From positions 124,001 to 188,000 of IMG/VR virus record IMGVR_UViG_3300008110_010000: 64,000 bases of DNA. One strand, given 5' to 3'. The notes beneath the pieces are model-generated. The model was not told the DNA's origin, searched no databases, and was given only the letters and a program-made list of their open reading frames with translations. A program made the translations under genes and the position numbers. This document shows positions 1-47,698 of this stretch, in pieces; the first letter of the stretch is position 1; the number at the start of each line of letters is the position of its first letter.

Positions 1-2
1 AC

Positions 3-707
3 TTGATCCTTCCCTTTTCTAGATTTCAGCTAAGAGCTGATTCCCGGGGTAAGGAATTAAGATTGAGATTTATTGATCTTGATTTTAAATATGAGGAAAC
101 ATCAAGTAGGGATATGGTTTTTACTATGGGAATGAGCGGAAATTGGAATTATTCCAACGATGTTTTCTCCATTCCAAACCACACACATCTAAGAATTGTT
201 GATTCCAAGTATGGCATTCTTGGATTACATGACGTTAGAAGATTTGCCAGATGGGACTGGAGAGGATGGAATCCGGAAAGAGGTCCGGACCCAGATACTG
301 AATTTGATTCTTTCGTTGACAACATTTACAAGAATATTCAAACGGACAGGGTTTTTAATAAACCCGTGTATGAAGTATTAATGAACCAAAAATATTTTAA
401 CGGCGTAGGAAATTACTTAAGAGCGGAGATTCTAGGAAGAATCGATTCAGATCCCACAGCTTCTGCCAGAGAATATATTCTTCTTAATGGACCTGAATTT
501 TTTGCTATTCTTTCTAAGGTTATTAAGGAATCCTATATCCTAGGAGGAGGACAATTTAAAGATTGGTACAATCAGGCAGATTTGGAAAAGAAAAAAAGTA
601 AAGAATTTCAAGCATGGATGAAATTCTATTTACATAAAGAAAGGTGTATTGCAATTAAAGATTCGTCTAAAAGAACTTTTTGGATGGATAAAAAATGGAT
701 AAAATGA
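3..707 (+). CDS. nei: Fpg/Nei-family DNA glycosylase/AP lyase, NEIL1-like zincless-finger type (5'-truncated at window edge)
   Basis: Motifs RGKELRL, GMSG, HLR, DVRRFARW, RGP and the H2TH signature LMNQKYFNGVGNYLRAEIL. No C-terminal 4-Cys zinc finger. The N-terminal catalytic PE motif lies outside the window. Confidence 0.88.
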   Translation: MILPFSRFQLRADSRGKELRLRFIDLDFKYEETSSRDMVFTMGMSGNWNYSNDVFSIPNHTHLRIVDSKYGILGLHDVRRFARWDWRGWNPERGPDPDTEFDSFVDNIYKNIQTDRVFNKPVYEVLMNQKYFNGVGNYLRAEILGRIDSDPTASAREYILLNGPEFFAILSKVIKESYILGGGQFKDWYNQADLEKKKSKEFQAWMKFYLHKERCIAIKDSSKRTFWMDKKWIK

Positions 708-1399
708 TAAGTAAAGAAGACCTTAAAAAAATTCTATATTTCGACATCGAAACTGCTGGGATAACGAATACTTTCGAAGAGCTTGAAATTGAAAATCCTA
801 GACTTGCTAAATTGTGGGAAAAAAGATCATCCTGGCTCTTGAAAAATTCAGGTGAAGAGATGAAAGATTATTCTCCAGCAGATTTTTGGAAGGTTAAATC
901 TTCGTTGCACCCGGAGTTCTCCAAAATCGTTTGCATAACTTTTGGATGCTATGATGAAGATAAATCAATCAGGCTAGTTTCTTTTTCCGGTGAAGAGGAT
1001 CAAATTCTGATGGATTCCAACAAGATCTTTAATAACGCATTTACAAAAGGATGGAAACTTGCAGGACATACGATTAAAAATTTTGACATTCCCTTTGTTG
1101 GAAAGAGAATGATAATCAATAAAATTAAGCCTTCCCATTTGGTAGCATATCTGAATAGAAAACCCTGGGAATCTCCACACCTAGACATATCTGAGATTTT
1201 TGCTTTTGGAGGATGGGGACAAACTCACACTTCACTTGATTTAATGGCTTGCGTTCTGGGTATAGAATCCCCTAAAGACGATATGGACGGATCAATGGTC
1301 CATGAATACTTCTATGAGGGAAAGATTGAGAACATTAAAAAGTACTGCGAAATGGATGTGACTGTTCTGATGAAGTGCTTTGATGCTCTTTCTTTTTAA
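695..1399 (+). CDS. 3'-5' exonuclease related to the PolB proofreading domain (DEDD); true start may be ATG 704
   Basis: ExoI YFDIET, ExoII GHTIKNFDIPF, ExoIII YCEMDV, plus SLDLMACVLGIESPK typical of stand-alone PolB-exo2 proteins. ATG 704 forms an ATGA overlap with the upstream stop. Confidence 0.88.
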   Translation: MDKMISKEDLKKILYFDIETAGITNTFEELEIENPRLAKLWEKRSSWLLKNSGEEMKDYSPADFWKVKSSLHPEFSKIVCITFGCYDEDKSIRLVSFSGEEDQILMDSNKIFNNAFTKGWKLAGHTIKNFDIPFVGKRMIINKIKPSHLVAYLNRKPWESPHLDISEIFAFGGWGQTHTSLDLMACVLGIESPKDDMDGSMVHEYFYEGKIENIKKYCEMDVTVLMKCFDALSF

Positions 1400-1420
1400 T
1401 CTAATTACAACTATAGTACT

Positions 1421-1460
1421 ACACCCTAGGATATATACTTTTAAAATATTCCTAGGGTGT
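1421..1460 (+). promoter_or_regulatory. Inverted repeat enclosing a GATATATA motif and covering the GTG start of the nucleotidyltransferase gene
   Basis: ACACCCTAGGA (1421-1431) pairs perfectly with TCCTAGGGTGT (1450-1460). GATATATA at 1430-1437, GTG start at 1457-1459. Confidence 0.6.
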
Positions 1461-2200
1461 TTCGTATACAAAATTTTAAAGACTGGTCGCTAAACGAGGA
1501 TCGTTTCTATCAAAAGGAGCTAAATACTGTTTTTTGGAAGAATGGCTCGTTCGACTCTGGGGTAAGAGAAAAACTTCTAGATATAGCCCAGGATTTCTAC
1601 TCGATCTTTAAAATAGAACTGCCGATAGATGATATTCAATTAACCGGATCTCTGGCAAATTATAACTGGACCCCAAAATCAGATCTTGATGTTCACGTTT
1701 TAATCGATTTTTCACAGATAGATTCCAATAAAGAGCTTGTAAAAAAAGCTTTTGATGGACAAAGATTCATATGGAATCTAAGGCATAACATTGTTATCAG
1801 AGGGTATGATGTTGAACTTTACCTACAAGACATAAACGAACCCCATGTAGCATCCGGACTTTTTTCCCTTAAAAACAACGAATGGATTAGAATTCCTTCT
1901 TATAATCCTCCTCAGATAGACGAAAGAGATGTGGATTTGAAATATGATGGTATTATAAACGATATAGACAGTGTGGATATAGAACTTTCTAAAACAGACT
2001 CCGAAATGGATGCCAGAGAGGTACATCAGCACGCAGAAAGGGTTAAATCCAAGATCATGAAAATGAGAAAGGAAGGCCTAGAAACCAGAGGAGAATTCTC
2101 AGTAGAGAACCTAGTCTTTAAAAAGTTGAGAAACGAAGGATATATACAGAAGTTAATCGATCTTATATCAAGATCGTACGAAAAAATTTATAGTGAATAA
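1457..2200 (+). CDS. Pol-beta-superfamily nucleotidyltransferase with capsid-targeting-like N-terminus
   Basis: hG[S]x9DxD signature LTGSLANYNWTPKSDLDVHV and third acidic strand YDVELY. N-terminus FRIQNFKDWSLNE. Confidence 0.8.
   Translation: MFRIQNFKDWSLNEDRFYQKELNTVFWKNGSFDSGVREKLLDIAQDFYSIFKIELPIDDIQLTGSLANYNWTPKSDLDVHVLIDFSQIDSNKELVKKAFDGQRFIWNLRHNIVIRGYDVELYLQDINEPHVASGLFSLKNNEWIRIPSYNPPQIDERDVDLKYDGIINDIDSVDIELSKTDSEMDAREVHQHAERVKSKIMKMRKEGLETRGEFSVENLVFKKLRNEGYIQKLIDLISRSYEKIYSE
2139..2146 (+). promoter_or_regulatory. Putative late promoter motif GATATATA (upstream of the 2212 gene)
   Basis: Exact motif about 65 nt upstream of ATG 2212, but inside the preceding CDS. Confidence 0.35.
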
Positions 2201-2211
2201 AAAACAATAAG

Positions 2212-4767
2212 ATGTCAGGAATTTACAAAGGATACAATCCAGTATACGAATCCCTAAAAAGAGAGATTTTTGAAGCAGAATCTAAAGTAGACCTAAGTGT
2301 CTTAGGAAGAACTATTTATGACACGTTCGTTAATGTTATCATGAATAGCTCAGATGAAGCAATTAAGACTCCGGATGGTTTCAAAGCTTTCATGGACAGA
2401 GTTTTACAATCTAGTTCTTTAGAAGGAATTAGAAGTGAATTTCAAAAGAAGCTAGATATGGTTGCAGCTAGTGACAAAGTTCAGGCACAATCAATCAATG
2501 CATCCAAAACTTATCTGGATCAGCTTTTTGCTCAATTGACCGAATTAGTCGGTAAAGACGCAAAGGGGATGAAAGATGTATTAGGCATGATGGGTGGCTT
2601 TGTTGGATCCACGGTTTCTGGTTTACAAGGAGTACAAGCTCAATTAGCACAAAATGAAAGTTTAGTAACTAAATATATTGCTGAAGCAGATGAAGAACTT
2701 ACCGGTGAAGAATCTAGCTCCGAGGAAGGACTGGCAGATAAATGGTATACACAATTATCTAAGAACGTTTTAGACAGTGCAACATCTTTTGCTGGTGAAA
2801 CATCCGCAGCAATGAGCAACAAAAATTTAGCAGGTGATGCTGGAATCGTTGCTTTTTCTGAGGCAGCACAAAAATACTTAGACCAAGCTAAAGATTTATC
2901 TATTACTAGCGGTAGAAGAGGAATCCTAAAATTAGGAAAACTTCAAACTGCCTCAGGCACTATGAGAGGCAAAGATTATAGAGTTAAAGCTCAGAATTTA
3001 ATAAATGAGATTATCAGACAAAGAGAGGAATTTCAGAAACTAAAATATAGACTTTCTAATGTTCCTGCTCCTCCCACTCCAGTGGTAATGTGTCCAGCAG
3101 GAATGGCGTTTGATAAGACTAAAAATGCTTGCGTTTTTGTAACCAAACCTCCTAGAATAGAAGGGGAAGGACCTACACCCTTACCTAAACCTCCGGTACC
3201 AACTCCCCCAGTTCCCCCAACAGGATGTACTTTCCCTGTTGCAATAGGAGCTAAAAAGTGTTCAGAGGTAGCAAATCTACAAAGCAAGTTAATTTCAATG
3301 GATTCCTGTATCGCTGATATTCTTAATAAAGCAGGAGGTGCTGATGGGAGATACGGAAGGGTAACTGCTAAACTTGCAAATATTACCTATGCTTACCTAA
3401 GGGGATCAAATACTTTTGACGCTTCAGGAAGTTTAACAAAGGAAATGTTTGACACCATTATGGCAGGAGGTTCAGTACCCCTACCTTATTACGATATTGC
3501 TACACCTAAAAAAGAATCAGTTGACATATCAAAAGTAATGGAAAACAAAATATTCGAGAGAGAATATCAGGTTGGACCAGTTATTTCTTTTGACGATTTT
3601 TCTGAAATAGTTTCTGAAGCAGCTTATGAGATAAGTGAGGATGGTGTCGCAACCAACGTTGCTTCACCTTCATTAGGTAGTTGTATATGTAAAACATACG
3701 CCGACGGAGTAATCGACCCCGCATGCAAATTTTCTCCAGTTCCTGTTCCAATAACAGGCGGAACAGGGGGCACCGGTGCTACCGGTGCTACCGGTGCTAC
3801 AGGAGACCAAATACCAACCAGAGAAGATTGGAAGGGTCTTAAATATGTAAATAGCGGATCTTATCCAGTTTCATTTGACGAAAGTTTATTGAGTGCATGG
3901 ACCAAAGAAGTTGCTATGGCAGTGATAGGATACTTTTCGGGAGGATCTTCATATCTCATTAGAGCAGGAGGTACCGGTCTTAAAGCCCTAGGTATTAAAG
4001 CAGCTTCTAAAGTGGGTGCGACAAAACTAGCTCAAAGAATAGGAGCAACAGCAGTTGGTAAAGTCGCAGCTCAACAGACTGCCAGAACAGCTGCTAGATT
4101 AAGTTCCCTATCTGCAGGATATTTTGCTAAATATGGAGCGATTCCTATTGCTAAAAGAGTAGCAGGGGGTTTCATCGGTGGAACTGTTGGTTCGGCGGCA
4201 TTAGATTTTCTTGCAGGAAGAAACTCTTATGTAATCACAGTGACTGAAGGCTATATAGAAAGAACTAACCTTCTAGGTGCGATAAACGGTATGGTTGATA
4301 CTATTGATGGTTACGTTAGTGACGATGATTGGGCAACAATCACTACAGTTCTTGCAATTATTAAAGGAGCATGGACTACAGACGAATCAGATAAACCAGT
4401 TTCAGCCTGGGGAGAATTAAAAAAACTATATCAAGAAGCAGAAGGTGAGGATCTAACAGCAGACATCGATAGTGTTTCGGCTAAATTTGGAGACGTTGAA
4501 GGTTATCCTAAGATTAAATCTCTTTCCCCACTTTCTTCAGTTCAAGACCTTGATTGGGACATAGCCGCTTCAGAAACCAAAAGGTTTGCAGAACTATTGG
4601 ACAGAAACGAATCTGCATTAGCAGAAAATCTAAGAAAACTCCCAGATAATTATGTTCAGGCCTTCGTAGAGCAAAATTTCGTAGAATATGATGAGGAAGG
4701 AAATATCGAAGGTGAAGAAAATACAGGAGCTCCTGCAGAAGATGCAACAAAGAAAAAGGGTCTATAA
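2212..4767 (+). CDS. Large putative virion/internal-head protein with Pro-rich linker, peptidoglycan-binding-like motif and Gly/Ala-rich hydrophobic segment
   Basis: VANLQSKL...GADGRYGRVT resembles PG_binding_1 (DGxFGxxT). Hydrophobic Gly-zipper-like stretch about 3890-4215. Adjacent to head genes. Confidence 0.5.
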   Translation: MSGIYKGYNPVYESLKREIFEAESKVDLSVLGRTIYDTFVNVIMNSSDEAIKTPDGFKAFMDRVLQSSSLEGIRSEFQKKLDMVAASDKVQAQSINASKTYLDQLFAQLTELVGKDAKGMKDVLGMMGGFVGSTVSGLQGVQAQLAQNESLVTKYIAEADEELTGEESSSEEGLADKWYTQLSKNVLDSATSFAGETSAAMSNKNLAGDAGIVAFSEAAQKYLDQAKDLSITSGRRGILKLGKLQTASGTMRGKDYRVKAQNLINEIIRQREEFQKLKYRLSNVPAPPTPVVMCPAGMAFDKTKNACVFVTKPPRIEGEGPTPLPKPPVPTPPVPPTGCTFPVAIGAKKCSEVANLQSKLISMDSCIADILNKAGGADGRYGRVTAKLANITYAYLRGSNTFDASGSLTKEMFDTIMAGGSVPLPYYDIATPKKESVDISKVMENKIFEREYQVGPVISFDDFSEIVSEAAYEISEDGVATNVASPSLGSCICKTYADGVIDPACKFSPVPVPITGGTGGTGATGATGATGDQIPTREDWKGLKYVNSGSYPVSFDESLLSAWTKEVAMAVIGYFSGGSSYLIRAGGTGLKALGIKAASKVGATKLAQRIGATAVGKVAAQQTARTAARLSSLSAGYFAKYGAIPIAKRVAGGFIGGTVGSAALDFLAGRNSYVITVTEGYIERTNLLGAINGMVDTIDGYVSDDDWATITTVLAIIKGAWTTDESDKPVSAWGELKKLYQEAEGEDLTADIDSVSAKFGDVEGYPKIKSLSPLSSVQDLDWDIAASETKRFAELLDRNESALAENLRKLPDNYVQAFVEQNFVEYDEEGNIEGEENTGAPAEDATKKKGL

Positions 4768-4772
4768 AAATA

Positions 4773-4780
4773 GATATATA
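4773..4780 (+). promoter_or_regulatory. Putative late promoter motif GATATATA
   Basis: Exact motif in the intergenic gap 20 nt upstream of the prohead protease ATG. Confidence 0.65.
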
Positions 4781-4800: not shown

Positions 4801-6791
4801 ATGAGTCTTAATAACGAATTCGTTTTAGTCCTTGAAAAATCTTCACATAATATGAAGATGGAGAAAAACGGAAGCGATTATTTCCTAGAAGGAATCGCTG
4901 CTGTTTTTGGTAAGGAGAACTCAAATCAAAGAATCTATGAGGAAAGAGAATATCTCCCCCATCTTCAATATTTGAAAGAAAAAATAGACCAAAAAAGATT
5001 AGTAGGTGAATTAGATCACCCTAAGGAATTTGATGTGTCTCTTAAAAACATTTCTCATATCATTGAGGGACTTAACTATAATCAGGACGACAGAACACTT
5101 CGTATTAAGGTTAAACTTTTAGATACTCCAGCCGGTAAAATAGCTAAGTCTTTAGTTGATGCTGGTGTACCGGTTTCCATTTCTTCGAGAGCAGCTGGTA
5201 ACGTTCTAGAAAACAAAAAAGTGCAAATTAAAAAGATCTTTACATATGATTTAGTGGCAGATCCTGGTTTTGAAAATGCACAGCTTGAGAGAGTTTATGA
5301 AAGTCTTGGATATAACGCTGAGCAAAAAAGCATGGCAGAATCTATCATAAAAGGACTCCCTTTAGTTAACGAAAGTCTTGGATTAGAAAATGATTCAAAT
5401 TTTAAGATATATAGAATAAACGATCAGGAAAAAATAAAAAAGCTTCTAGATAAGGAGCCAAATAAGAGTTTAATCATGGAAAATAATTTCGTTACAGCGG
5501 AGGAAATGAACGGATACTCTAAACTAATTAAAAAGGAGATGGATACTATTAAAGGATCTATTGAATCTTTAAGAACTGTTAAGGGAGAGCCTGTTAAGGA
5601 ATCGAATTCCTCTCTTGAAGAAAGAGTAGCAAAATTGGAAAAGTATGCTGATTATTTGGCAGAAAATCTTGAAGCCTCTATTAAATATGGTGAATACCTA
5701 GCTGAGAATCTAGAAGATTCTGTTTCTTATTCCAAATATTTAGCAGAGAATCTTGATAAATCTATTTCTTATGCTAAGTACCTTGCAGAACATTTGGATA
5801 ACAATATTTCTTACTCTGAATACATCGCAGAAAATGTTGACAATAACATGTCAGCAGTTAAATCTATATCTGAGAGATTAGATCAAGGTATTGCTTACAC
5901 AGAATATGTAGCAGAAAGCGTAGATAAGAATATTAAGTACAGCGAGTATCTTGCTGAGAACTTAGATAAAAATATTTCTTATTCGGAATACCTTGCAGAG
6001 AACGTAGATAAGAACATNNNNNNNNNNNNNNNNNNAACCTAGACAAAGGATTAGCCTATGCTGATTATCTAGGAGAAAATCTTGATAAAACAGTTCAGTA
6101 CAGCGATTATTTAGCTGAAAAGCTTTCTAAGAATATTAGCTATGCTGAATATATTGCCGAGACAGTTAATTCTTCAAACGGCACTAAGGAAATGAAAGAA
6201 GCGGTAACTAAAGCAATTTCAGAGAACACAAATACTTCTGGATATGCTGGAGATTACAGCAAAATTTCAAACAAAATCGACAACTTATTAAATACCGTTA
6301 GTAAACAAAAAACGGAACAAATAGCAGAAGCTAAGAATTTTCCTTTCTTGGGTCTTATGAGCCAAGCAAATCAGACACAATTCTTATCCCTGCATGAGGG
6401 CCAAAAACAAAAGGTCGCTAAAGCGTTGAACGAAAGCAACTACTCATCCGAAAAAGAGGTAGTTGAAATCATGGGTAAAGCTCTGGTTGAACAAAATCAA
6501 TCTGGAGAAAAGTTCTTAGACATGATGCCAGAAAAATATAGAGGAGCTTGGGAAAGCATGAACGAGGGTCAAAAAGCCTCTATCATTGCTCAAAGCAAAT
6601 TCTATAGACTGGACACACCTTACCAAATCCAGAACTTCTGGGCTACTAGGGGTATTTCAGTTCCAAAGGCAAATGTGGAAAGAATAGACGAATCCCAAAA
6701 TCAAACAATCTCAGCTTCTCAGCCAAAGGCAGTCTCTAGAGAATATCTACAGAACCTTTCAGAGGCTTTAGAAGCTAGATTTAAAAAATAA
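4801..6791 (+). CDS. gp21: Prohead core protease (T4 gp21-like) fused to scaffolding protein; one gene split in the ORF track by an assembly gap
   Basis: N-terminal GELDHP, SISSRAAG, TYDLVADPGF are gp21-type motifs. The YxxYLAENL repeats continue after the Ns (from 6036: NLDKGLAYADYLGENL...) in frame with the 6192-6791 ORF. Directly upstream of the MCP. Confidence 0.88.
5641..6168 (+). repeat. In-frame 42-bp (14-aa) tandem repeat, at least 12 copies, consensus xYxEYLAENLDKxI
   Basis: KYADYLAENLEASI, KYGEYLAENLEDSV, SYSKYLAENLDKSI, SYAKYLAEHLDNNI, SYSEYIAENVDNNM, (degenerate SAVKSISERLDQGI), AYTEYVAESVDKNI, KYSEYLAENLDKNI, SYSEYLAENVDKN, [gap], AYADYLGENLDKTV, QYSDYLAEKLSKNI, SYAEYIAETV. Confidence 0.92.
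6018..6035. other. Assembly gap (18 N) inside the scaffold repeat
   Basis: Run of N in the sequence; the flanks are out of frame with each other, consistent with a mis-sized gap in a tandem repeat. Confidence 0.97.
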
Positions 6792-6805: not shown

Positions 6806-8545
6806 ATGCAACTAATTAATCAACATGAAATCTATGAAACCTGGGCTCCAGTACTTGAGAGCAAAACAGGTATTCAAGAGAAAGGCAAATTAGATTGGTT
6901 AACCAAATATTGCCATTATCACTCTCTAAACGAATCTGCTGGTGCGTACAACACTCTTGGCGTACTTGGCGGTATGGGTCAAATTGCTGCTCCTTCAAAC
7001 GTAGGTCTTTCTGGCGGTCCTGCTGGCTTTTATGCTGGTGGTTCTTATGCTGGTACAGGTCTTGGTTCTGGTGACAAATTCCCTTCACTTCTTCCGCTTG
7101 CTATTCAGGTAGCTGCTAAGACAGTAGGTTTTGACATTGTTCCAGTTATCCCAATGAGCGGTCCTACAGGAGTACTTAGCTATCTTGACTATGTATATGC
7201 TGGTGGTAAGCTTTCTGGTACTGACACAGTATCTCCTTACACAGCTTCTTCCCCTGACCTTATTAAAGTTCCTTCCTCAACAGCTTCTCCAGTATCTGGT
7301 TTAACTGTAGGATCAACTTACCTTCTAGGTGCTGCAGGTCTTTCTTCAACAAAAGATCTTGATAGTGCTGGTGTTGGTGCTCTTGTAGCTGGTAAATATG
7401 TTGGTAACTCTCGTATCGATGGTTTTCCAATTTTCCAAGTAATAGCTCAAACAACTGGTTTCTCAATTGCTCAAGCAATCGATGCAGATGCAGTTATCTA
7501 CTCTGGTTCATTCAATACAGGAACAAACGTTTACACAATCTCTGCAACAGTAGGCTATGCTAACGGTGCTGCAGTATTAGTTAAGACTCTAGAAGATCAC
7601 GTACAAGGTGCTTCTGGTGCTGGTCTTGACAACACAAACGCTTGGCAAGGTCCATACGTAGACGGTACAAAAGCCTACGATCCTATGTCAAGAGGTACAG
7701 CTGAAAGTACTTATTTCAAGTCTCTTGGTTTAACTACTTTCACTAAGTTCGTAGAAGCTGGAACTTTCCAAGTTGCTGCTTCTGTGACAACTGAGCAAAT
7801 CCAAGATCTTAACAAGCAATTCGGTATCGACGTAGTTTCTATGATCGAAAACGCACTTGTTAATGAGGTTTCTCAGGCGATCAACAAGCACATCCTTTCT
7901 AGAGCATTTGCTCTTGGATGGTCTAACCACGCTGAATTCAAGAACACAGAAGGTACTAACCTTAACTTGAACTTGAAATTCACTGGAGGTGGATCTAACT
8001 TAACCTTCATCGGTAAAGATAACGCTCAGCTTGTAATTGCTGGTGGTACTGCTATCGGTACAGGTGGTTATGAGAACCAGTCAACTGTACAAAGAAGACT
8101 ATTCTCAAGAATCCTTGCTGCTGCTAACGTGGTTGCAAACAGAGGAAGAAGAGGCCCTGCTAACTTCATCGTTACTAACTCTCAAGTTGCCTCTGCTTTA
8201 CAGGATATCTCTCAGTTCACTTTCGCTCCTTTCACAAACACTCTTACTCAGAACAACGGTACACTTTACCCAGTTGGTTCTATCGCTGGTATGACAGTTT
8301 ATGTTGACCAGAACATGTCTTTCGGAGACACAAGAGTGCTAGTAGGTAGAAAAGGTGGAGACGACGAACCAGGTCTTAAGTTCATGCCTTACATGATGGC
8401 TGAGTCAATTCAGACTATCTCTGAAGGTACTATGTCACCTAAGATTGCAGTTAAATCTAGATACGCTCTAGTTGAGGCTGGTCACCATCCTCAAACAATG
8501 TACATCTGCTTCCACGTAGAAGTACCTGCAACTGGTATTGCTTAA
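6806..8545 (+). CDS. gp23: Major capsid protein, T4 gp23-like, with a large Ser/Thr/Gly/Ala-rich insertion
   Basis: VVPVIPMSGPTG-type motif (IVPVIPMSGPTGVLSYLDY), EINKHIL-like segment, RGRRGPANFIVT, FMPYM...PKIAVKSRYAL. Strong highly-expressed codon bias. Follows the protease/scaffold. Confidence 0.95.
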   Translation: MQLINQHEIYETWAPVLESKTGIQEKGKLDWLTKYCHYHSLNESAGAYNTLGVLGGMGQIAAPSNVGLSGGPAGFYAGGSYAGTGLGSGDKFPSLLPLAIQVAAKTVGFDIVPVIPMSGPTGVLSYLDYVYAGGKLSGTDTVSPYTASSPDLIKVPSSTASPVSGLTVGSTYLLGAAGLSSTKDLDSAGVGALVAGKYVGNSRIDGFPIFQVIAQTTGFSIAQAIDADAVIYSGSFNTGTNVYTISATVGYANGAAVLVKTLEDHVQGASGAGLDNTNAWQGPYVDGTKAYDPMSRGTAESTYFKSLGLTTFTKFVEAGTFQVAASVTTEQIQDLNKQFGIDVVSMIENALVNEVSQAINKHILSRAFALGWSNHAEFKNTEGTNLNLNLKFTGGGSNLTFIGKDNAQLVIAGGTAIGTGGYENQSTVQRRLFSRILAAANVVANRGRRGPANFIVTNSQVASALQDISQFTFAPFTNTLTQNNGTLYPVGSIAGMTVYVDQNMSFGDTRVLVGRKGGDDEPGLKFMPYMMAESIQTISEGTMSPKIAVKSRYALVEAGHHPQTMYICFHVEVPATGIA

Positions 8546-13501: not shown

Positions 13502-14919
13502 TGTGCGGAATACTAATTGCTCATAATCCCTCAGAGGAAAGGATAAAATCCATTTCTCATAGAGGTATTGAATATTACACTCATTCAGATGCTTCTGGAC
13601 TGACTCTATGCCACCATAGATTGCCTATTCAGACTGCAGTTGGTGACGGCTGGATTCAGCCAGTAGAGTTATCTAATAACCGTTATCTCCTATTTAACGG
13701 GGAAATTTTTAATTACCCCTTACATTATGGATCAGATACAGAATACCTCAAAGATCTTTTTAGTACCTTTGAATTTTCCTCCTTGGAGATGTTTATCTCT
13801 CTATATGAACCACATATTAAAAGCTGGGATGGGTTTTGGGCTATTTGCTTGGTTGATATGTCCAAGAAAGATGTGATTTGCTTTACAGATCCTCTAGGTA
13901 AGAAGTGCCTTTATACCAACGAATTAGGTGAGATCTGTTCAGAGATGAAAGGTTTACTGAATGAAAATTCTATAATTAGCTCAGGATTTATGGGCGGTGT
14001 GAGGAAATGGGGGTATGTTGCTAACGAATCTACCCCCTTCGAAAACGTCCAAAAATTAAAACCTAATTTCATCTACAAATGGAATTTTAATGCTCCGGAC
14101 TTTAAGCAAGAATATGGTCCTTATTTCGCATTTAAACCCCCCAAATTTCAATTTGATTCTGAAGACATGTTACTAGATTGGGTTTGGAATAAACTCGAGC
14201 TGGCAACAAAAAACAGGCTATTAAGCTTGGATTATCCTATCTCCATCTTACTATCCGGTGGATTGGACTCTTCTATCATAGGAGGGTTACTTCTTAAACT
14301 TGGGGCAGATGTTAGCTGGTACACTATCAATAATGGTCCAGATGACGAATATGTTAGAGAATGCGAGGATTACTGGGGAATAAAAGTAAATCGCCTAGAA
14401 TACAACATGAATGAGGTAGATTTAGATCTAAACGAGATTTATTTTAGGTGGAACGAATCCCCCGTTGATATGGGAAGTGTGGTACCCCAATATCATCTCT
14501 TTGATGCTATTAAAAAAGGAACAAATACCAGAATAGTTTTATCCGGTGATGGGGCGGATGAAATGTTTGGGGGGTATCGGAGAATAAACGAATATGATTC
14601 CCAGCAATCCGATATTTTCCATGAACTCACATATTATCACCTTCCTAGATTAGATAAAATGAGTATGGCACATACTTTGGAGTTAAGAAACCCGTTTTTA
14701 AATTTAGAACTAATTCAGCTTGCAATGTGGCTTCCATTTGAATACCGGAAGAATAAGACAATTTTGAAAAAAACTTTCAAAGGGCTAGTTCCAGATTCTG
14801 TTATAGAAAGAAAGAAACATCCTTTAAAGAACGACAAAATAGTAAAAGATCCCAATGATTATAGGGTTGAAGCTATTAATTACTTTGTAAAGGGATACGA
14901 AAACTATCTTTTAAAATAG
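13501..14919 (+). CDS. asnB: Asparagine synthetase B-like glutamine amidotransferase
   Basis: Ntn Cys at MCGI, HRG, HHRL, FNGEIFNY; synthetase SGGLDSS, SGDGADEMFGGY, RLDKMSMAHTLELRNPFL. Confidence 0.92.
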   Translation: MCGILIAHNPSEERIKSISHRGIEYYTHSDASGLTLCHHRLPIQTAVGDGWIQPVELSNNRYLLFNGEIFNYPLHYGSDTEYLKDLFSTFEFSSLEMFISLYEPHIKSWDGFWAICLVDMSKKDVICFTDPLGKKCLYTNELGEICSEMKGLLNENSIISSGFMGGVRKWGYVANESTPFENVQKLKPNFIYKWNFNAPDFKQEYGPYFAFKPPKFQFDSEDMLLDWVWNKLELATKNRLLSLDYPISILLSGGLDSSIIGGLLLKLGADVSWYTINNGPDDEYVRECEDYWGIKVNRLEYNMNEVDLDLNEIYFRWNESPVDMGSVVPQYHLFDAIKKGTNTRIVLSGDGADEMFGGYRRINEYDSQQSDIFHELTYYHLPRLDKMSMAHTLELRNPFLNLELIQLAMWLPFEYRKNKTILKKTFKGLVPDSVIERKKHPLKNDKIVKDPNDYRVEAINYFVKGYENYLLK

Positions 14920-16377
14920 ATCTATACCTGCTGTAGAATCTCCCTTAGCTTTAAGAGGAGAATATTTCATAGGTTCTTGTGTCAGCAAGAAAGTTTTACT
15001 TGAATCTACTATTAGGCCAGCTTCCTCCATAAATGTTCTGTTAATTAACATCGGGGTGCTTTTATAGGTTCTATCCACTAGAGAAAATTTTATCTTCTTA
15101 TAGACCATTCCATTGAATTCTACATCCATGAGAATTACTGGTCTCTTCTCTGTTTGATCACCAACCTCAGCATGAGAGTAATCTACTATTCTGTTACTAA
15201 AGGATTTACCCCCAATTGTCCAATTTATAAATTCATCCTCTTGGATTGAATAGTCTGCATGTAAAGAACATGCCATTGCTCCGTTCCCGGTGTCAAGTTT
15301 ACCTATAAATTTACCAACACCTTTTACATCAAAGATCTCTCTAAATCCTGCTACTTTTCTTGGATAGTTCCAGTTCTTTTTATTTAAGATGAAATCTAAA
15401 ACTATTGATGTGACATCTAAACCTGTTGCTTTTTCTATGCCATCAGTTCCGGGAGATGCATTTACCTCTAGAACATAAGGTAAACCTGTATCCTTTTCTA
15501 TGATAATATCAACTCCACACCAGGAACATCCAGTAGCTTTTGCTGCTTCTATAGCAAGATGTTCTATTTCTGGAGATATTTCGATAGCTTCTGCTCTGCC
15601 GCCTAATGAGACATTGGTTCTAAAATCTTTTTCAATCTTGATCCTTTTCATTGCAGCTATAACCGTATAATCAGTTCCCGTTCTCTCGTTCTTGGTCCCA
15701 AGTACATGGATTCTCAGGTCGTGGTCCGCTTCAATTTTTTCTTGTACAATAAGCTCAGTATCCGGTGATAATTTCCAAATTGTTTGTAATGTAGAAAGTA
15801 AAGATTCCTGTGAATCTGCCTGAAATACACCTATTCCCTTTGTTCCGCTGAGGAGCTTTACAATTACCGGATATTTTCCTCCTATTCTAGAAACGGAGCT
15901 TTCGATATCTTCCTCCGATGATATAAGAGAAGTTTTTGGCGTTGATATTTTTTTCTCTTGAAGTTTTTGAACTGTATCTAATTTATCTTCACAAAGAAGC
16001 ACAGATTTTAATGAGTTTACTGAAACAAAGCCCAGAGATTCTAATTTCTCAAAGAATTTAACAGCAGCGGTGGAGTTTATGCTAGATCTTCTAGCAAGAA
16101 TGATGGAGCTTTTAGGTTCTATTTCATACTTGTTTTTACTTCCTTTATTTCTTATATAAAAGCTTCCAGATTCTGTTTTTTCTATTTCCCCTTGTGATGT
16201 ATCAACAACAACACATTTAAAGTTCATAGCAGAGGATTTAGCCATCATTTTTTTAACAGTTGGGGCATATGAGTTTTCTTTGGACTCTAGCTTGGTTGTT
16301 AAAATTATTAAAGATATTGGTTTCCCTTGATTTGGTTTACCCCCCTGAAATACGAATTCTTCTTGTTCTGTAATCAC
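14911..16377 (-). CDS. RimK-family ATP-grasp ligase fused to C-terminal RimK-associated aspartic-protease-like domain
   Basis: EDKLDT, YPVIVKLLSGTKGIGV, IVQEKI, DLRIHV, DFRTNVSLGG, GVDII, VLEVNASPG; C-terminal GKLDTGNG and LINRTFM. Confidence 0.88.
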   Translation of the reverse strand: MITEQEEFVFQGGKPNQGKPISLIILTTKLESKENSYAPTVKKMMAKSSAMNFKCVVVDTSQGEIEKTESGSFYIRNKGSKNKYEIEPKSSIILARRSSINSTAAVKFFEKLESLGFVSVNSLKSVLLCEDKLDTVQKLQEKKISTPKTSLISSEEDIESSVSRIGGKYPVIVKLLSGTKGIGVFQADSQESLLSTLQTIWKLSPDTELIVQEKIEADHDLRIHVLGTKNERTGTDYTVIAAMKRIKIEKDFRTNVSLGGRAEAIEISPEIEHLAIEAAKATGCSWCGVDIIIEKDTGLPYVLEVNASPGTDGIEKATGLDVTSIVLDFILNKKNWNYPRKVAGFREIFDVKGVGKFIGKLDTGNGAMACSLHADYSIQEDEFINWTIGGKSFSNRIVDYSHAEVGDQTEKRPVILMDVEFNGMVYKKIKFSLVDRTYKSTPMLINRTFMEEAGLIVDSSKTFLLTQEPMKYSPLKAKGDSTAGIDLF

Positions 16378-16394
16378 TACCTTATTTGTTTATC

Positions 16395-16431
16395 TATATA
16401 TCAACGTTTCCCCTGCAAGAAGAGATATATA
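16395..16431. promoter_or_regulatory. Back-to-back divergent GATATATA motifs
   Basis: TATATATC at 16395-16402 (minus-strand motif facing RimK) and GATATATA(AATA) at 16424-16431 facing ATG 16447. Confidence 0.7.
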
Positions 16432-16446
16432 AATAAAAAAGTAAAG

Positions 16447-17100
16447 ATGAAGGTACTAAGGTATTCGGAATTTAGTTTAAACGAATCTCATGAGGAGTAC
16501 TTTAAGCTCTTAGAAGGACTAGATGCTCATTATCAAAACATGGTTGAAAATGGATATAGTCAGAATCAGATCGATGAGGGTATATGGGATTTAGTAGGAT
16601 CACTAGGTGCAGGATTTACTGACCGAATGAAAAACTATGCTGCTGGATGGCTTTTGAAGCAATTGGGTCTTCCCTCAGATAACAACTTTTTAAGTGAATT
16701 TGCAAAGAACATTATCGAACAAGTAAGTTTTAGAAATATAGGAAGATATTTCGGAGAAGGATCCTGTAAATATTGGATAGATGCCATCGGAAAAGGACTA
16801 TTGGAGACACTAGAAGAAAAAGCGCTTGCCGTTATCTTATCCAGAGGAATTGGAATAGACATTAACATGAGCGGAGGTTTTATGGGAACACTTGCCGGAT
16901 CAATGAGAGAGGCTTTAACTAATTATATAAACTCAACACAATTTGTGGAATCTTTGAGTGATAAACTTGAGGGTGTAGTTTGTGGTCAGGGAACTTCTTT
17001 TACCAACATATTCGGAGGTAAATTCTCAGAAAAAGATATAGAAAATGCTGCTATGGGAAAAGAGAAAAGCGGCGGTATTCTGGATATATTAGGTATATAA
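16447..17100 (+). CDS. Putative internal head protein (start revised to ATG 16447)
   Basis: MKVLRYSEFSLNES N-terminus directly after the promoter motif. The longer 16327 start would overlap the divergent RimK gene. Gly-rich amphipathic segments. Confidence 0.55.
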   Translation: MKVLRYSEFSLNESHEEYFKLLEGLDAHYQNMVENGYSQNQIDEGIWDLVGSLGAGFTDRMKNYAAGWLLKQLGLPSDNNFLSEFAKNIIEQVSFRNIGRYFGEGSCKYWIDAIGKGLLETLEEKALAVILSRGIGIDINMSGGFMGTLAGSMREALTNYINSTQFVESLSDKLEGVVCGQGTSFTNIFGGKFSEKDIENAAMGKEKSGGILDILGI

Positions 17101-17965: not shown

Positions 17966-17998
17966 AAGGGATCAATTATTTGATCCCTTTTTCTTTTT
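17966..17998 (+). terminator. Rho-independent terminator
   Basis: AAGGGATCAA-TTAT-TTGATCCCTT followed by TTTCTTTTT. Confidence 0.88.
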
Positions 17999-36849: not shown

Positions 36850-37635
36850 ATGTCTGTACAGAATATTCAAGAATCAAATATTGAAAGAGCCCAGCATTTC
36901 TTGGGTGTTGTTGTGGATAACAAAGATCCGGAATTTAGGGCAAGATGTAAAGTTAAGGTTTTTGGAGTATTTGACGATGTTGCAGATACGGATCTACCAT
37001 GGGCGTTCCAAAGATTTGATATTTCATTTGGTGACAATGGTGGATCTGGAAGGGTTAGTATACCTAAATTAGGTGCAGTTGTCCATGTCCAATTCAATAA
37101 CGGGAACTACTATGCCCCCGAATACAAAGCAGTACAAGAATTATCTTCCGATTTAATAGAAGAAATAAAAGCATCTTATGAAGGTGCTCATTCTCTAATC
37201 TATGACGGAATAGAACAGCTAAAAATATATTACACTGTTGCTAAAGGACTCGTAATAGATTTAAAAGAGTCAACTGTGGTAATTTCTAATGATAATTCAA
37301 TAACAATAACACATGCTGGCCAAACATCTACCCTTGAATTTAGAGGTGGTAAAATTACAGAGTATGCAAATTCTGAAATAGAAAGCACTGCAGTAACTAG
37401 AATTAAACAAAGCAGCAACGAAGTTTGGGCAGACGGTAAAACAACAAAGCTTGGTCATTCCCCTGTTTATTCTGCAGTTTTAGCGGAACCTTTATGGATG
37501 TTTTTAAAACAACTCGCAGCAGCGGTAGATGCTAAAGTTCCTTCCTGTCCTGGGTGTATGGCTACCCTTGCAGAAAGCTACGAACAGCTCTCTACGTCCG
37601 ATGTGGTTAAGTTAACTAAGAGTAATGAGCAATAA
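36850..37635 (+). CDS. gp5: Baseplate central spike, gp5 N-terminal OB-fold type, no lysozyme domain
   Basis: FLGVVVDNKDPEFRARCKVKVFG...LPWA...IPKLGAVVHVQFNNGNYYAPEY followed by beta-strand repeats. Confidence 0.85.
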   Translation: MSVQNIQESNIERAQHFLGVVVDNKDPEFRARCKVKVFGVFDDVADTDLPWAFQRFDISFGDNGGSGRVSIPKLGAVVHVQFNNGNYYAPEYKAVQELSSDLIEEIKASYEGAHSLIYDGIEQLKIYYTVAKGLVIDLKESTVVISNDNSITITHAGQTSTLEFRGGKITEYANSEIESTAVTRIKQSSNEVWADGKTTKLGHSPVYSAVLAEPLWMFLKQLAAAVDAKVPSCPGCMATLAESYEQLSTSDVVKLTKSNEQ

Positions 37636-40600
37636 TTTAGAAAACCTTGATAAGTGGGTAAAAGATCTCGAAAACGGTACTATAACTGTTGAAGAGTTAG
37701 CTGCAAGATTGTCTTCCATTCCTGATCCTCTCGGGAAGGAGGAAGATATAATTAACGCTGGGGAAGAAATTAATAATTCATTAAATCCTGAAGATTTAAT
37801 ACTTACTGATAATGAGATAAATGATATTATATGTAAATACGAGGGCGAGGAATTAGGAAATAGATTAATCTGGAAAATTTTAGAAAAACTTAATTTAACT
37901 TCAGATCTTAAAGAAATTCCGGATTTTTCTAATAATGACTCATTTGAGAAATATTTTGAAAGAATTTCTTTGCAAGATAGATTACAAAGAGCCAAGGAAA
38001 TGCTTTTTGATAATCTTGATTTAGATCTTATAGGCATCAAAGTTAAAAGCCCTAATTTAAAAAAAAGAAATTTTAAAATTCTAGGCTTTAATTTTCCTCT
38101 CAATATCATAACATATAAGGGTAAGCCCTTGTTTTTTCATATAGCTCCTCCTAAGGTCAACCTCTCCAAAATACTTCAAAGACTAAGAGACAGAATAAAA
38201 TCTAAAAAGGTAAAGAGCTGCGAAAAGAAAGGAACTTATATAGATGAGGATGATCTTTTAAAAAAGTTAGAGAATCTTCTAAACGACGAAAAGGAAGAAT
38301 ATAACAATGTATTTGAAATCGCTGATGAGGTTTTTTGTGAGCCTGATATTCCAATTAATCCTGAAACGGGGGAATCGCTTTTCACAAAAAACGACTTAAC
38401 TCAGTTTTTGAAAGAAATATGTGAGCCCGAAATTCCTTCTCCAGAAACACCTATCGATCCTGAACCTGATATAGAAGATATTTCAGACACTATTAATTCG
38501 TGCTTAAAGCAAACTAAATCCATATTTAATGAAGTTAGGGAAAAGAATGAAGAAAAAGCTAGACTTCAAAAAGCAGAAAAAGAGCTGGAGGAGGTTTTGT
38601 TTTATTATAAAATAATTCATAATTATTATGACGAATTATATTCCCAATTTGAAAAGAAAAGCAAAGCGGGTAAAAAAGGAGATCCATTAAAATTAGCAAT
38701 CAATTTAGTACTTGGAACCGGAGCTGACGATTATATAAAGAAATTAAATCAATTTTCTTCAAGATTTCAGTCTACTAAAAAAATAATACTTCCTGGTAGT
38801 AAATACATTGGAATATCATTTGGAATAGATTTTCCACACGGCTTAGGGAAAAAAATTCCGTATGAGAGAGTAAAAATGGAGGTTAATAACGATCTGATGA
38901 GTCAAGATTATCAAAAGGTCGACACATCTAAACTCCAGGTAGGAATGGAGTACAGCAAGGGTGGATTATTAGGAGGGCAGGATACCTCATTTTTCAAAGA
39001 TTTTGAATCTTTTTTAAAAATCAAGGATGAAAATCCTAAGAATAAAACAGACTACTATAGTTTCGTTAGCGATATAGAAAACTCTAACAAAAGCAAGGGT
39101 CAAATTATTAAATCAATAGAATCTGATCATGGATTTTTATTTTCCAATCTAATAGAGACATCTGCAAGTCCTTGGATATTTTTTACTGCTCAGGAAAGAG
39201 GAGATAATGATGCTAGAAAATCTGCCGATATAAAACCAGCAAAAACCGACAAGGAAGGAAATCCAAACAAGGAATTTGAAGAATTCTGGCAAGACTTTAA
39301 AACAAAATGGGACCAAAAGTATAACGATAGAAAGAAAACAATAGAGGATAAAATACTGGATTTAAAAAAATCTTCGGATGCCTTAGCAGAAAAAATAGCG
39401 GATTATTATTTTACGATCAGCGTGTCTTCTGTAAAGAAAAATAGTGAACTTCTTAAAGAAGCTTCAGATGGAATAAAATCAAGGGTTACTGCAATTGAAA
39501 ATTCTTTAATGTCAATAGCTGAGAAGATAACTAAGTTAGATCAGGAGAATTCTCCAGAGGGACTTTCCACCAAAGCTAATTCCATAAGTTGTGCCACTAA
39601 AAAAGAAGAGAAATGCCCAACAGAATGTTGCGGTCCTGCTGGGCAGAGTTTAAAATTAAAAGATACATGTGCTTCACATCGATCTCCGGATTGTCCAAAT
39701 CTTTTTACCAAATGCTATTGGAAAGAGTTTTGTAAAAATTTAAATAAAGTGGGATTACTCCCCCTCCCTGCTGGTCTTCCCCCTATAGAAAATCCCGCAA
39801 ATTTTTTACCGAATCTGGGTTTAAAATATTGGCCGGTAGGTTATCTTCCGCCATCTTTTATACCTTTACCTCCACCGATAGTGAATCCATTAGACGGGTT
39901 ACCTTTTATTAGAATTCCTATGCCAATGGTATGGACGAAGGTAGATCCTGTTGTTATTCCGATAGGAATTGGGGTCATAGTTATATTCGTTCCTTTCATC
40001 GGGGGATTCATGCCTAGCCCCCTAGTTTTTTTCCATGATTTTTTAACTGGGAATAGTATGTTTCTTCTTGGACTCAGAGGGTTTAGGTTCATTCCTAGAA
40101 AATCTGATCCTGTTGCTAACGATCCTCTCGAAAATTACAAAAAGATGCTTTCTAAAGGAATACCAAACTTTCTTTTTCCTTTTTCCAACCTTGGAAAAGA
40201 TGACGTTGATGATCCTAAAAGACTTTTCGGAGAAGTTGTTTCGAATCTTGAAAAGAGACTTGCAAATTATAGCAAGCCTGTAAACATGGAGAAAATCCAA
40301 AAATTACAAGACAAGATAACAAAAAAGAAAGAGGAGTCTCAATCTAAGATACTAGAAAAGAAAAGAAAAATGGCTTTAGAGGGTGGAGATATTAAAAAAG
40401 AGAAGGAGGAAATAGACAACTTTCTAAAATCTATAGACGGTGAAAAAATATCAGCCTTAAAAGATATTATGAAAGAATATTTGACGGGAGCGGTAGACAT
40501 TCCAGATATTCAGTTCCCTAAAAAATCAAAAAATCTTTTAGTTGATCTGCCCCAGCCTATAAAATCTTTAAGGGATTTAGATGCTAAAAGAAAACTTGGT

Positions 40601-47443: not shown

Positions 47444-47698
47444 ATGTTTAATACTGAAAGAAAAAGTTATTATGACTACATAAATTCAACAAGAGATAAT
47501 AGATCAAATGTTGGATTCAACTACGAGGGGCAGATATTTGAAAAAACCCTGTCCTCTATAACACTTGAAGGCGACAAAAACAGGAAAAGTATAATGTCGT
47601 ATATCGAGAGGGTAGTTTATAGATTAATCGAGGCAACTAAGGGAATTAGAAATTTTGTTAACTACAGAGTTCCTAAAAATAATAAGTACGTTAGGTAA
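47444..47698 (+). CDS. Small baseplate-associated hypothetical protein
   Basis: Tightly coupled between the gp6-like and gp7-like genes. Confidence 0.55.
   Translation: MFNTERKSYYDYINSTRDNRSNVGFNYEGQIFEKTLSSITLEGDKNRKSIMSYIERVVYRLIEATKGIRNFVNYRVPKNNKYVR

What the first reader, a model, noticed from the sequence alone, without database searches (positions are those of the whole stretch)
1421..1460. Promoter-in-hairpin switch covering the nucleotidyltransferase start codon
Seen: an 11-bp perfect inverted repeat (1421-1431 / 1450-1460). Its right arm covers the GTG start and its left arm/loop holds the GATATATA motif. The upstream genes (glycosylase, exonuclease) are on the same strand with no obvious terminator. 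Known: T4 silences e, soc and I-TevI on long early transcripts with an RBS-sequestering hairpin, while late transcripts start inside the hairpin and lack the 5' arm. Inference: the same logic restricts this enzyme to late expression, which fits a packaged or toxic cargo.
Basis: partly seen in the sequence, partly recalled or inferred. Interest (0 to 1): 0.62.

Follow-up and report, generated by a model that had tools for sequence, protein, structure and literature searches.

The report
Late promoter inside start-codon hairpin
A conserved RNA hairpin in a T4-like phage of uncultured freshwater bacteria hides the start codon of a nucleotidyltransferase gene and carries a late promoter inside it, the same timing trick that phage T4 uses for its lysozyme gene, so it is a real regulatory element of a known kind.

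Summary
Three to four inner A-U pairs extend it to about 15 bp. The right arm covers the GTG start and GATATATA straddles the left arm and loop.

A perfect 11-bp repeat alone is not rare in 64 kb. The evidence is comparative. All 35 distinct upstream sequences from relatives with at least 59% protein identity keep the same layout. In 33 of them the best fold spans the box and reaches the start codon. The outer stem changes sequence while staying paired.

GATATATA is this phage's version of the T4 late promoter TATAAATA. It is strongly enriched just upstream of start codons and it precedes structural genes. The genome also encodes a gp55-type late sigma factor.

The upstream repair genes have a different promoter type and no terminator before the hairpin. 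RNA started at the predicted late start (about 1443) lacks the left arm and leaves the start codon open.

This matches the T4 e, soc, 49 and I-TevI mechanism, so it is a new member of a known kind. A second, also conserved copy of the device precedes a tail-fibre gene.

No transcript data could be obtained. The "packaged or toxic cargo" idea is untested.

The parts
1..707 (+). 3' part of a Fpg/Nei-like DNA glycosylase gene. Its ATG lies 111 nt before the window, at genome 123889, and is preceded at genome 123850 by the non-late promoter-like motif CGGGG-N-TAnnTTTA.
   Evidence: Pfam Fapy_DNA_glyco and H2TH; NCBIfam fpg/nei models below cut-off; promoter-like motif.
695..1399 (+). PolB-exo-like 3'-5' exonuclease gene. 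It overlaps the glycosylase gene by 13 nt and its stop lies 21 nt before the hairpin. It is the presumed source of read-through RNA.
   Evidence: Pfam DNA_pol_B_exo2 7.6e-16; no terminator-like site downstream.
1421..1431 (+). 5' (left) arm of the hairpin, ACACCCTAGGA. It lies at about -22 to -12 relative to the predicted late start, so it is present only in RNA started upstream.
   Evidence: covariation with the right arm in relatives.
1430..1437 (+). Late-promoter box GATATATA, the local form of the T4 box TATAAATA at -13 to -6.
   Evidence: ATATATA is invariant in all 35 distinct relatives although partly unpaired. 26 of 43 genomic copies lie within 48 nt upstream of starts on the sense strand, against 0.9 expected. 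The motif precedes structural genes. The genome has a gp55 homologue.
1441..1446 (+). Predicted late transcription start (about A1443), in the loop. Late mRNA would have a leader of about 14 nt and no left arm. This is inferred, not mapped.
   Evidence: T4 rule that the box occupies -13 to -6 (PMC2988020). RNA from 1443 folds at -7.2 kcal/mol, z = +1.5, with an open centroid at the start codon.
1450..1460 (+). 3' (right) arm, TCCTAGGGTGT, containing the GTG start codon at 1457-1459.
   Evidence: In 33 of 35 relatives the right arm reaches base 0 to +5 of the start codon.
1457..2200 (+). Nucleotidyltransferase gene (247 aa, GTG start). It is a Pol-beta-type fold with a GS...DxD motif plus a C-terminal helical bundle; the substrate is unknown.
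   Evidence: Pfam NTP_transf_2 at its cut-off; phrog_36119 4e-37, unknown function; invariant G64 S65 D76 D78; AF2 model pLDDT 86.9; weak fold matches to ANT and CD-NTase enzymes.
2212..4767 (+). 851-aa ORF of unknown function, 11 nt after the nucleotidyltransferase gene and with no promoter box of its own. It is probably co-transcribed from the hairpin promoter.
   Evidence: no family hit.
4773..4780 (+). Next late-promoter box (GATATATA), 20 nt before the prohead protease gene (4801-6042). That gene is followed by the major capsid protein gene (6806-8545). No hairpin here.

Best explanation
The element is a temporal translation gate of the T4 type.

Shown:
- A conserved hairpin of about 15 bp pairs the GTG start codon of the nucleotidyltransferase gene with a segment 26-36 nt upstream.
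- An 8-bp box embedded in the left arm and loop is this phage's late-promoter motif.
- The genome encodes a gp55-type late sigma factor.

Inferred:
- Before late transcription begins, RNA made from the non-late promoter ahead of the glycosylase-exonuclease operon runs through the gap, because no terminator lies there. That RNA contains both arms and folds, so ribosomes cannot reach the start codon.
- The likely host is a Bacteroidota bacterium and the gene has no Shine-Dalgarno sequence. An open start region is therefore probably the main requirement for initiation.
- Late in infection, gp55-RNA polymerase starts at about 1443, inside the loop. That mRNA lacks the left arm, has an unstructured A/U-rich 14-nt leader, and is translated.
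- The weak GTG or TTG start codons, present in every hairpin-bearing relative, would further lower leaky translation of the folded form.
For: Structure:
- The window hairpin folds at -21.4 kcal/mol, z = -5.0.
- From the predicted late start the fold is -7.2 kcal/mol, z = +1.5, with the start codon open.

Conservation:
- All 35 distinct upstream sequences from relatives with 59-90% protein identity have the box, a flanking stem and a GTG or TTG start.
- In 33 of 35 the best fold spans the box and reaches the start codon.
- Truncation at the predicted start removes nearly all folding energy in every case.

Covariation:
- Positions -2 to -9 left of the box show 4-6 pair types each.
- Examples are ATCGGGATAT/ATATCCCGAT, ATTGGGATAT/ATATCCTGAT and ATTAGGATAT/ATATCCTGAT, and AGATAT/ATATCT.
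- Cognate outer arms pair better than swapped arms in 5000 of 5000 permutations.
- On a plain MAFFT alignment, 77% of cells are paired against 69% when shuffled (0 of 500 shuffles as high). There are 49 double-change cells against 25 (0 of 500), and 8 of 13 pairs show compensatory change. Slid controls give 21-51% paired. A model-based alignment gives the same picture.
- The sense strand folds better than the antisense strand in 25 of 35 sequences, p = 0.002. G-U pairs on the sense strand point to RNA.

Promoter:
- ATATATA is invariant although partly in the loop, whereas the right arm varies.
- The motif is enriched about 29-fold in upstream windows.
- It directly precedes the tail sheath, tail collar fibre, neck-like, prohead protease and tail-fibre genes.
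- A gp55 homologue is present (T4 gp55 E = 3.6e-6; phrog_234 E = 6e-17).

Context:
- The upstream operon carries a different promoter-like motif, shared with the DNA ligase gene.
- No terminator lies between it and the hairpin.

Second instance:
- Of 62 box-plus-start pairs in the genome, only this one and the box before a collagen/Peptidase_S74 tail-fibre gene have a strong hairpin spanning the predicted start. The second also sits directly behind replication genes.
- The second hairpin is conserved in relatives, with a compensatory change from ATTCTTT/AAAGAAT to GTTCTTT/AAAGAAC.

Precedent:
- T4 genes e, soc, 49 and I-TevI (PMC3014915).
Against:
- The late start is placed by analogy with T4.
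- Relatives with a strong terminator just upstream (L091, L023) still keep a weaker hairpin, at -10.3 and -9.7 kcal/mol.
- Across 121 distinct loci, presence of the hairpin was not significantly anti-correlated with an upstream terminator using my crude detector (p = 0.25).
- The downstream 851-aa gene has an open A-rich start region. The hairpin alone would not keep it silent on read-through RNA.
Confidence: 0.68

Rival explanations
1. The hairpin mainly acts on the upstream operon. It would be a U-tract-independent terminator or attenuator, or a 3'-end stabiliser, for the glycosylase-exonuclease transcript. The late promoter would simply be packed into the same short spacer.
For: The hairpin sits 21 nt after the exonuclease stop codon and is stable, at -21.4 kcal/mol. 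In T4-type phages, composite promoter-plus-stem-loop cassettes (PeSLs) do act as terminators (PMC2839356).
Against: No T-run follows the stem in the window or in relatives. This genome's obvious terminators have G+C-rich stems followed by T-runs, for example around 17966-17995. This explanation does not account for the right arm always reaching the start codon (33 of 35). It also does not account for the universal non-ATG start codons.
Confidence: 0.12
2. The hairpin is present in all nucleotidyltransferase mRNAs because transcription starts upstream of 1421. Together with the weak start codon it simply keeps the enzyme at a low constant level, with no temporal role.
For: Every hairpin-bearing relative uses a weak GTG or TTG start. 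No start site has been mapped.
Against: ATATATA is invariant in 35 of 35 sequences even where unpaired, while its pairing partner varies. That argues for a sequence-specific function of the box. The same box at the same distance precedes about 50 other genes without hairpins. No other promoter-like motif lies between 1399 and 1421.
Confidence: 0.1
3. The symmetry acts at the DNA level. It would be a palindromic operator for a dimeric regulator, or a cruciform, that controls the late promoter.
For: The inner half-sites GGATAT and ATATCC are the best conserved part of the stem.
Against: The outer arms differ in sequence between lineages yet stay complementary, which a sequence-specific operator would not do. 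G-U pairs occur on the sense strand, and the sense strand folds better than the antisense strand. The loop length varies from about 9 to 16 nt, which would disturb the spacing of the half-sites.
Confidence: 0.07
4. It is a chance inverted repeat with no function.
For: Perfect 11-bp inverted repeats occur at 5 distinct places in the window, and 75% of random sequences had at least one.
Against: Conservation and covariation across 35 distinct relatives; z = -5.0.
Confidence: 0.01

Closest known systems
Phage T4 genes e (lysozyme), soc, 49 and I-TevI: inhibitory hairpins at the translation initiation region with an internal late promoter
   Same: A hairpin sequesters the initiation region on long early or middle transcripts. 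A T4-type 8-bp late promoter lies in the DNA that encodes the 5' strand, so late transcripts lack that strand and are translated (PMC3014915). The phage here is T4-like: it has a Gp23 capsid protein, an S77 prohead protease and a gp55 homologue.
   Different: - A different gene (a nucleotidyltransferase, plus a tail-fibre gene) in a distant T4-like lineage whose capsid protein is closest to phages of Bacteroidota.
- The box is GATATATA, not TATAAATA.
- No Shine-Dalgarno sequence is involved; only the start codon and its flanks are paired.
- The start codon is GTG or TTG in all 35 hairpin-bearing relatives.
- Nothing has been tested experimentally.
Hairpins that sequester the ribosome binding site of free-standing homing endonuclease genes (Aeh1 mobE, T4 segB)
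   Same: An RNA hairpin at the initiation region limits translation of a gene embedded among genes of another class (PMC3014915).
   Different: Those genes are mobile endonucleases. The gene here is a conserved, vertically inherited enzyme gene at a fixed place next to the head-gene cluster.
PeSLs (promoter-early stem-loops) of T4-type phages
   Same: A short intergenic cassette that combines a promoter with a stem-loop.
   Different: PeSLs have sigma70-like early promoters beside, not inside, a GGGG...CCCC stem-loop that terminates transcription. They are repeated in hyperplastic regions and mediate recombination (PMC2839356). Here the promoter is of the late type, it lies inside the stem-loop, there is no T-run, the stem sequence is lineage-specific, and the element is tied to one gene.
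Intrinsic (Rho-independent) terminators
   Same: A stable G+C-containing hairpin just after a stop codon.
   Different: There is no U-tract and the 3' arm overlaps the next gene's start codon.

Membership tests
T4-type late-promoter-in-hairpin translational gate (e, soc, 49, I-TevI) | A stable hairpin pairs the start codon and/or ribosome binding site in transcripts that start upstream. | tested here: met
   In silico only. The fold is -21.4 kcal/mol, z = -5.0, with GTG 1457-1459 paired. In 33 of 35 relatives the right arm reaches the start codon.
T4-type late-promoter-in-hairpin translational gate (e, soc, 49, I-TevI) | A T4-type late promoter box lies in the DNA that encodes the 5' strand or loop. 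| tested here: met
   GATATATA at 1430-1437. The motif is enriched upstream of starts (26 of 43 copies against 0.9 expected) and precedes structural genes. It is invariant in relatives.
T4-type late-promoter-in-hairpin translational gate (e, soc, 49, I-TevI) | The phage has the T4 late transcription machinery (gp55 late sigma factor). | tested here: met
   ORF at genome 109220-109576: T4 gp55 E = 3.6e-6; phrog_234 'late sigma transcription factor' E = 6e-17. gp33 was not looked for.
T4-type late-promoter-in-hairpin translational gate (e, soc, 49, I-TevI) | Late transcripts start between the arms and lack the 5' strand. | not testable with these tools
   The start at about 1443 is inferred from the T4 spacing rule.
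T4-type late-promoter-in-hairpin translational gate (e, soc, 49, I-TevI) | Earlier transcripts from upstream promoters extend through the hairpin. | tested here: inconclusive
   The upstream operon is co-oriented, has a different promoter-like motif and has no terminator-like site. There are no RNA data.
T4-type late-promoter-in-hairpin translational gate (e, soc, 49, I-TevI) | Translation from the long transcript is repressed, and is relieved by removing the 5' strand. | not testable with these tools
   This needs reporter or toeprint experiments. The only result here is the loss of folding energy on truncation.
Intrinsic terminator | A G+C-rich stem immediately followed by a run of T. | tested here: not met
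   The terminator scan lists no + strand site at 1-4184. The bases after the stem are TTCGTATAC, and relatives have no T-run either.
PeSL cassette | A sigma70-like early promoter (-35 and -10) next to a terminator stem-loop, repeated many times in variable regions. | tested here: not met
   No sigma70-like site at 1400-1460. The box is of the late type and lies inside the stem. Only two such hairpins occur among 62 promoter-start pairs.

The most novel reading that the evidence does not exclude
The hairpin may be more than a single-gene translation block. It could be a module-border insulator for phages whose hosts do not use Shine-Dalgarno sequences. Keeping the first late gene untranslated on read-through RNA would expose about 750 nt of naked RNA to Rho. 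Early transcripts would then terminate before they reach the rest of the head-gene cluster (the 851-aa gene, protease, scaffold and capsid genes). The same device at the replication-to-tail-fibre border would do the same job there. In distant relatives, the box-N5-ATG spacing predicts leaderless late mRNAs, which would be an alternative solution to the same problem.
Probability: 0.2. Interest if true: 0.6.

Novelty: new member of a known kind. Interest (0 to 1): 0.42.

Why it matters
It extends a classic T4 regulatory device, a late promoter nested in a start-site hairpin, to a deep-branching and uncultured clade of large T4-like phages that probably infect Bacteroidota. In those hosts translation does not rely on Shine-Dalgarno pairing.

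It gives this clade a usable late-promoter consensus, (G/A/T)ATA(T/A/G)ATA, and a second, non-late promoter-like motif. It marks the nucleotidyltransferase as a late gene across many T4-like lineages.

It also offers a clean natural covariation series for testing how start-codon accessibility alone controls translation. It is not a new mechanism.

Tried and rejected
- Near-identical DNA in the phage collection. No match.
- RNAalifold on the plain MAFFT alignment gave no consensus structure, because the bulged rows are out of register. I used explicit pair counts, a covariance-model alignment and my own anchored counts instead.
- Hypothesis that the hairpin and an upstream terminator are mutually exclusive across 121 distinct loci. 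Not supported with a crude detector (odds ratio 0.52, p = 0.25). L091 and L023 have both.
- Function of the nucleotidyltransferase. Pfam hits sit at or below cut-off. NCBIfam gave nothing. The PDB profile search gave only a weak DrrA match, E = 0.011. The first AF2 model was poor and the second good. Foldseek found nothing at E <= 0.001, only weak ANT and CD-NTase rows with TM 0.2-0.3. The wide structural search was dominated by generic helical bundles. No assignment was made.
- Cultured or named relatives. In Maribacter phage Molly_1 and the uncultured huge phage LR756501 the upstream regions of the homologues show no comparable hairpin or clear box, so they were uninformative.
- Homologues of the tail-fibre protein, to test the second hairpin. 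Its N-terminus has no close relatives. The test worked instead through the conserved upstream 5'-3' exonuclease gene.
- One script exceeded its time limit and was re-run. The mean of its random-sequence control is inflated by the 18 N in the window, so I quote only the fraction of random sequences with at least one hit from that call. The expected count of about 1.1 is my own composition estimate.

Full report
**What is there**

The window is bases 124001-188000 of a single 219,355-bp viral contig with 35% G+C. The phage is T4-like.
- The ORF at 6806-8545 is a Gp23-family major capsid protein, E = 2e-40.
- The ORF at 4801-6042 is an S77/S80 prohead protease.
- The capsid protein's nearest named relatives are Lak megaphages of Prevotella and phages of Tenacibaculum, Chryseobacterium and Flavobacterium. 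A Bacteroidota host is therefore likely, but this is an inference.

The repeat is exactly as described.
- ACACCCTAGGA (1421-1431) pairs with TCCTAGGGTGT (1450-1460).
- GTG 1457-1459 is inside the right arm.
- GATATATA is at 1430-1437.
- Folding adds four inner A-U pairs after a bulged U. The result is about 15 pairs and a 9-nt loop, at -21.4 kcal/mol, z = -5.0.

A perfect 11-bp inverted repeat by itself is not remarkable. There are five distinct ones in the window. My own estimate from base composition is about 1.1 expected, and 75% of the random sequences had at least one.

**Is the start codon right?**

GTG 1457 is the only canonical start after the in-frame stop at 1442. Homologues align from residue 3-4 onward. 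In distant relatives an ATG sits at the equivalent place. The start is therefore sound.

**Is the hairpin real?**

I collected relatives of the 247-aa protein from viral and metagenome contigs. For each I located the start codon and read the upstream sequence.

All 35 distinct upstream sequences from relatives with 59-90% protein identity share one layout:
- a variable outer left arm;
- GGATAT, followed by ATA and a variable loop;
- ATATCC, followed by a variable outer right arm;
- a GTG or TTG start codon at or inside the end of the right arm.

In 33 of the 35 the minimum-energy fold spans the box, and its right arm reaches base 0 to +5 of the start codon.

The outer arms differ between lineages but remain complementary.
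- ATCGGGATAT/ATATCCCGAT, ATTGGGATAT/ATATCCTGAT and ATTAGGATAT/ATATCCTGAT form a series that passes through G-U intermediates.
- AGATAT/ATATCT replaces GGATAT/ATATCC in one lineage.
- ACAGCCTGGA/TTCAGGCTGT and AACCCGGA/TCCGGGTT are further variants.

The quantitative tests agree.
- Positions -2 to -9 left of the box each show four to six pair types.
- Cognate outer arms pair better than arms swapped between loci in all 5000 permutations.
- On the unmodified MAFFT alignment, 77% of cells are paired against 69% after shuffling (0 of 500 shuffles as high). There are 49 double-change cells against 25 (0 of 500), and 8 of 13 pairs have compensatory changes. Slid registers give 21-51% paired.
- A covariance-model alignment gives the same picture.
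- The sense strand folds better than the antisense strand in 25 of 35 sequences, p = 0.002. Together with the G-U pairs, this points to RNA rather than DNA.

The relatives are not independent samples, so the shuffle counts overstate significance. The variety of stem sequences is direct evidence all the same.

**Is the box a late promoter?**

- GATATATA occurs 43 times in the genome. Of these, 26 lie within 48 nt upstream of a start codon on the sense strand, against 0.9 expected. The degenerate form (G/A/T)ATA(T/A/G)ATA gives 62 against 3.8 expected.
- The box resembles the T4 late promoter, an 8-bp TATA box at -13 to -6 with no -35 element (PMC2988020).
- It directly precedes the tail sheath gene (two tandem boxes), a tail collar fibre gene, a neck-like gene, the prohead protease gene that leads the capsid operon, and a collagen/Peptidase_S74 tail-fibre gene.
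- The genome encodes a gp55-type late sigma factor.
- In the 35 relatives ATATATA is invariant even where it is unpaired, while its pairing partner varies. The left side therefore carries a sequence-specific constraint beyond pairing.

**Context**

The two upstream genes are a Fpg/Nei-like glycosylase and a PolB-exo-like exonuclease. They overlap and are on the same strand.

The glycosylase gene is preceded at genome 123850 by a different motif, ATTTTT...CGGGG-N8-10-TAnnTTTA. The same motif precedes the DNA ligase gene and a metallophosphoesterase gene. Its TAnnTTT(A/G) element recalls, from my own knowledge, the Bacteroidota -7 box.

No terminator-like site lies on the + strand between 1 and 4184.

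The nucleotidyltransferase gene is thus the first gene after a repair module and the first of a block that runs into the head genes.

**Mechanism**

Applying the T4 spacing puts the late start at about A1443, in the loop.
- RNA from 1443 folds weakly (-7.2 kcal/mol, z = +1.5) and leaves the start codon open.
- In every relative, truncation at the predicted start removes nearly all folding energy.

This is the arrangement documented for T4 genes e, soc, 49 and I-TevI. There, long early transcripts fold and are not translated. Late transcripts start at a late promoter within the DNA that encodes the 5' strand, and they are translated (PMC3014915).

**A second copy of the device**

The genome has 62 box-plus-start pairs. 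Only two have a strong hairpin spanning the predicted start.
- One is the nucleotidyltransferase gene, at -19.0 kcal/mol.
- The other is an 838-aa collagen/Peptidase_S74 tail-fibre gene at genome 118382, at -15.1 kcal/mol.

The tail-fibre gene sits directly behind the ligase, clamp-loader and 5'-3' exonuclease genes. Its hairpin also pairs the ATG. It is conserved in loci whose neighbouring gene is 74-80% identical, with a compensatory change from ATTCTTT/AAAGAAT to GTTCTTT/AAAGAAC.

Both hairpins therefore sit where a late gene directly follows early-type genes on the same strand.

**More distant relatives**

Relatives below about 59% identity come from contigs whose homologues include cyanophage-like and marine forms.
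- They mostly have an ATG start and no hairpin.
- A late-type box (ATAAATA, CTAAATA or TATATATA) lies only about 5 nt before the start, often just after a canonical terminator. With the T4 spacing this predicts leaderless late mRNAs.
- One separate lineage (L118-L124) has its own AT-rich stem of about 13 bp that encloses TATATATA.

Late expression of this enzyme therefore appears to be general in T4-like phages, and the hairpin is one lineage's way of enforcing it.

**Limits**

- No transcript data could be obtained.
- Two relatives with an upstream terminator still keep a hairpin. A crude test of hairpin against terminator was not significant.
- The downstream 851-aa gene would not be silenced by the hairpin alone. 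Rho-dependent polarity on the untranslated gene is a possible answer, but it is speculation.

**The enzyme**

It is a Pol-beta-type nucleotidyltransferase plus a helical bundle. The GS...DxD residues are invariant. Fold resemblance to aminoglycoside nucleotidyltransferases and CD-NTases is weak. The substrate is unknown, and nothing tested here bears on 'packaged or toxic'.

**Verdict**

The element is real and under selection. It is a new member of a well-known T4 kind.

Noticed in passing
Genome 118330-118395 (outside the window; L160:5334-5395): A second late-promoter-in-hairpin, GTGGATATATAAGAAAAGTATCCAC plus outer pairs that cover the ATG. It lies before an 838-aa collagen-repeat/Peptidase_S74 tail-fibre gene that sits directly behind the ligase, clamp-loader and 5'-3' exonuclease genes. 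It is conserved in relatives with a compensatory change.
   Followed up: yes
Genome 1527, 37505, 75568, 114020 and 123850 (the last is 150 nt before the window start): A second promoter-like motif, ATTTTT...CGGGG-N8-10-TAnnTTTA, lies 4-20 nt before the starts of the DNA ligase, Fpg/Nei, metallophosphoesterase and other genes. It is probably the early or middle promoter class. The TAnnTTT(A/G) part resembles the Bacteroidota -7 box.
   Followed up: partly
Window 16382-16444: A 21-nt inverted repeat that is simply two divergent late-promoter boxes: GATATATA on the - strand at 16395-16402 before the RimK-like ATP-grasp gene (14911-16377), and on the + strand at 16424-16431 before the ORF starting at 16447.
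   Followed up: partly
Loci L033-L149 (relatives with less than 59% identity): In many distant relatives the late-type box lies exactly 5-6 nt before the ATG or GTG of the nucleotidyltransferase gene. With T4 spacing this predicts leaderless late mRNAs. The box often follows a canonical terminator.
   Followed up: partly
L118-L124 (contigs of 180-256 kb), about 45 nt upstream of the homologue's ATG: A separate lineage has an AT-rich stem of about 13 bp (TATCTAATATTT.../...AATATTAGATA) that encloses TATATATA and ends 4 nt before the ATG. It is the same geometry with an unrelated stem sequence.
   Followed up: no
Window 6018-6035: A run of 18 N (withheld bases) near the 3' end of the prohead protease ORF. 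It also distorts random-sequence controls built from the window.
   Followed up: no
Genome 89981 and 90027 (outside the window): Two tandem late-promoter boxes 46 nt apart lie before the 1123-aa tail sheath gene.
   Followed up: no
Window 14911-16377 (- strand): A RimK-like ATP-grasp domain fused to a Zn-protease-like C-terminus, preceded by a late-type box. This is an unusual late gene for a phage.
   Followed up: no
Window 47698-55227 and 37625-41929: Very long ORFs (2509 aa and 1434 aa) that I did not examine.
   Followed up: no
Genome about 58.9-66.1 kb (outside the window): Several tRNA-like sequences appear in the intergenic regions printed, which suggests a tRNA gene cluster.
   Followed up: no
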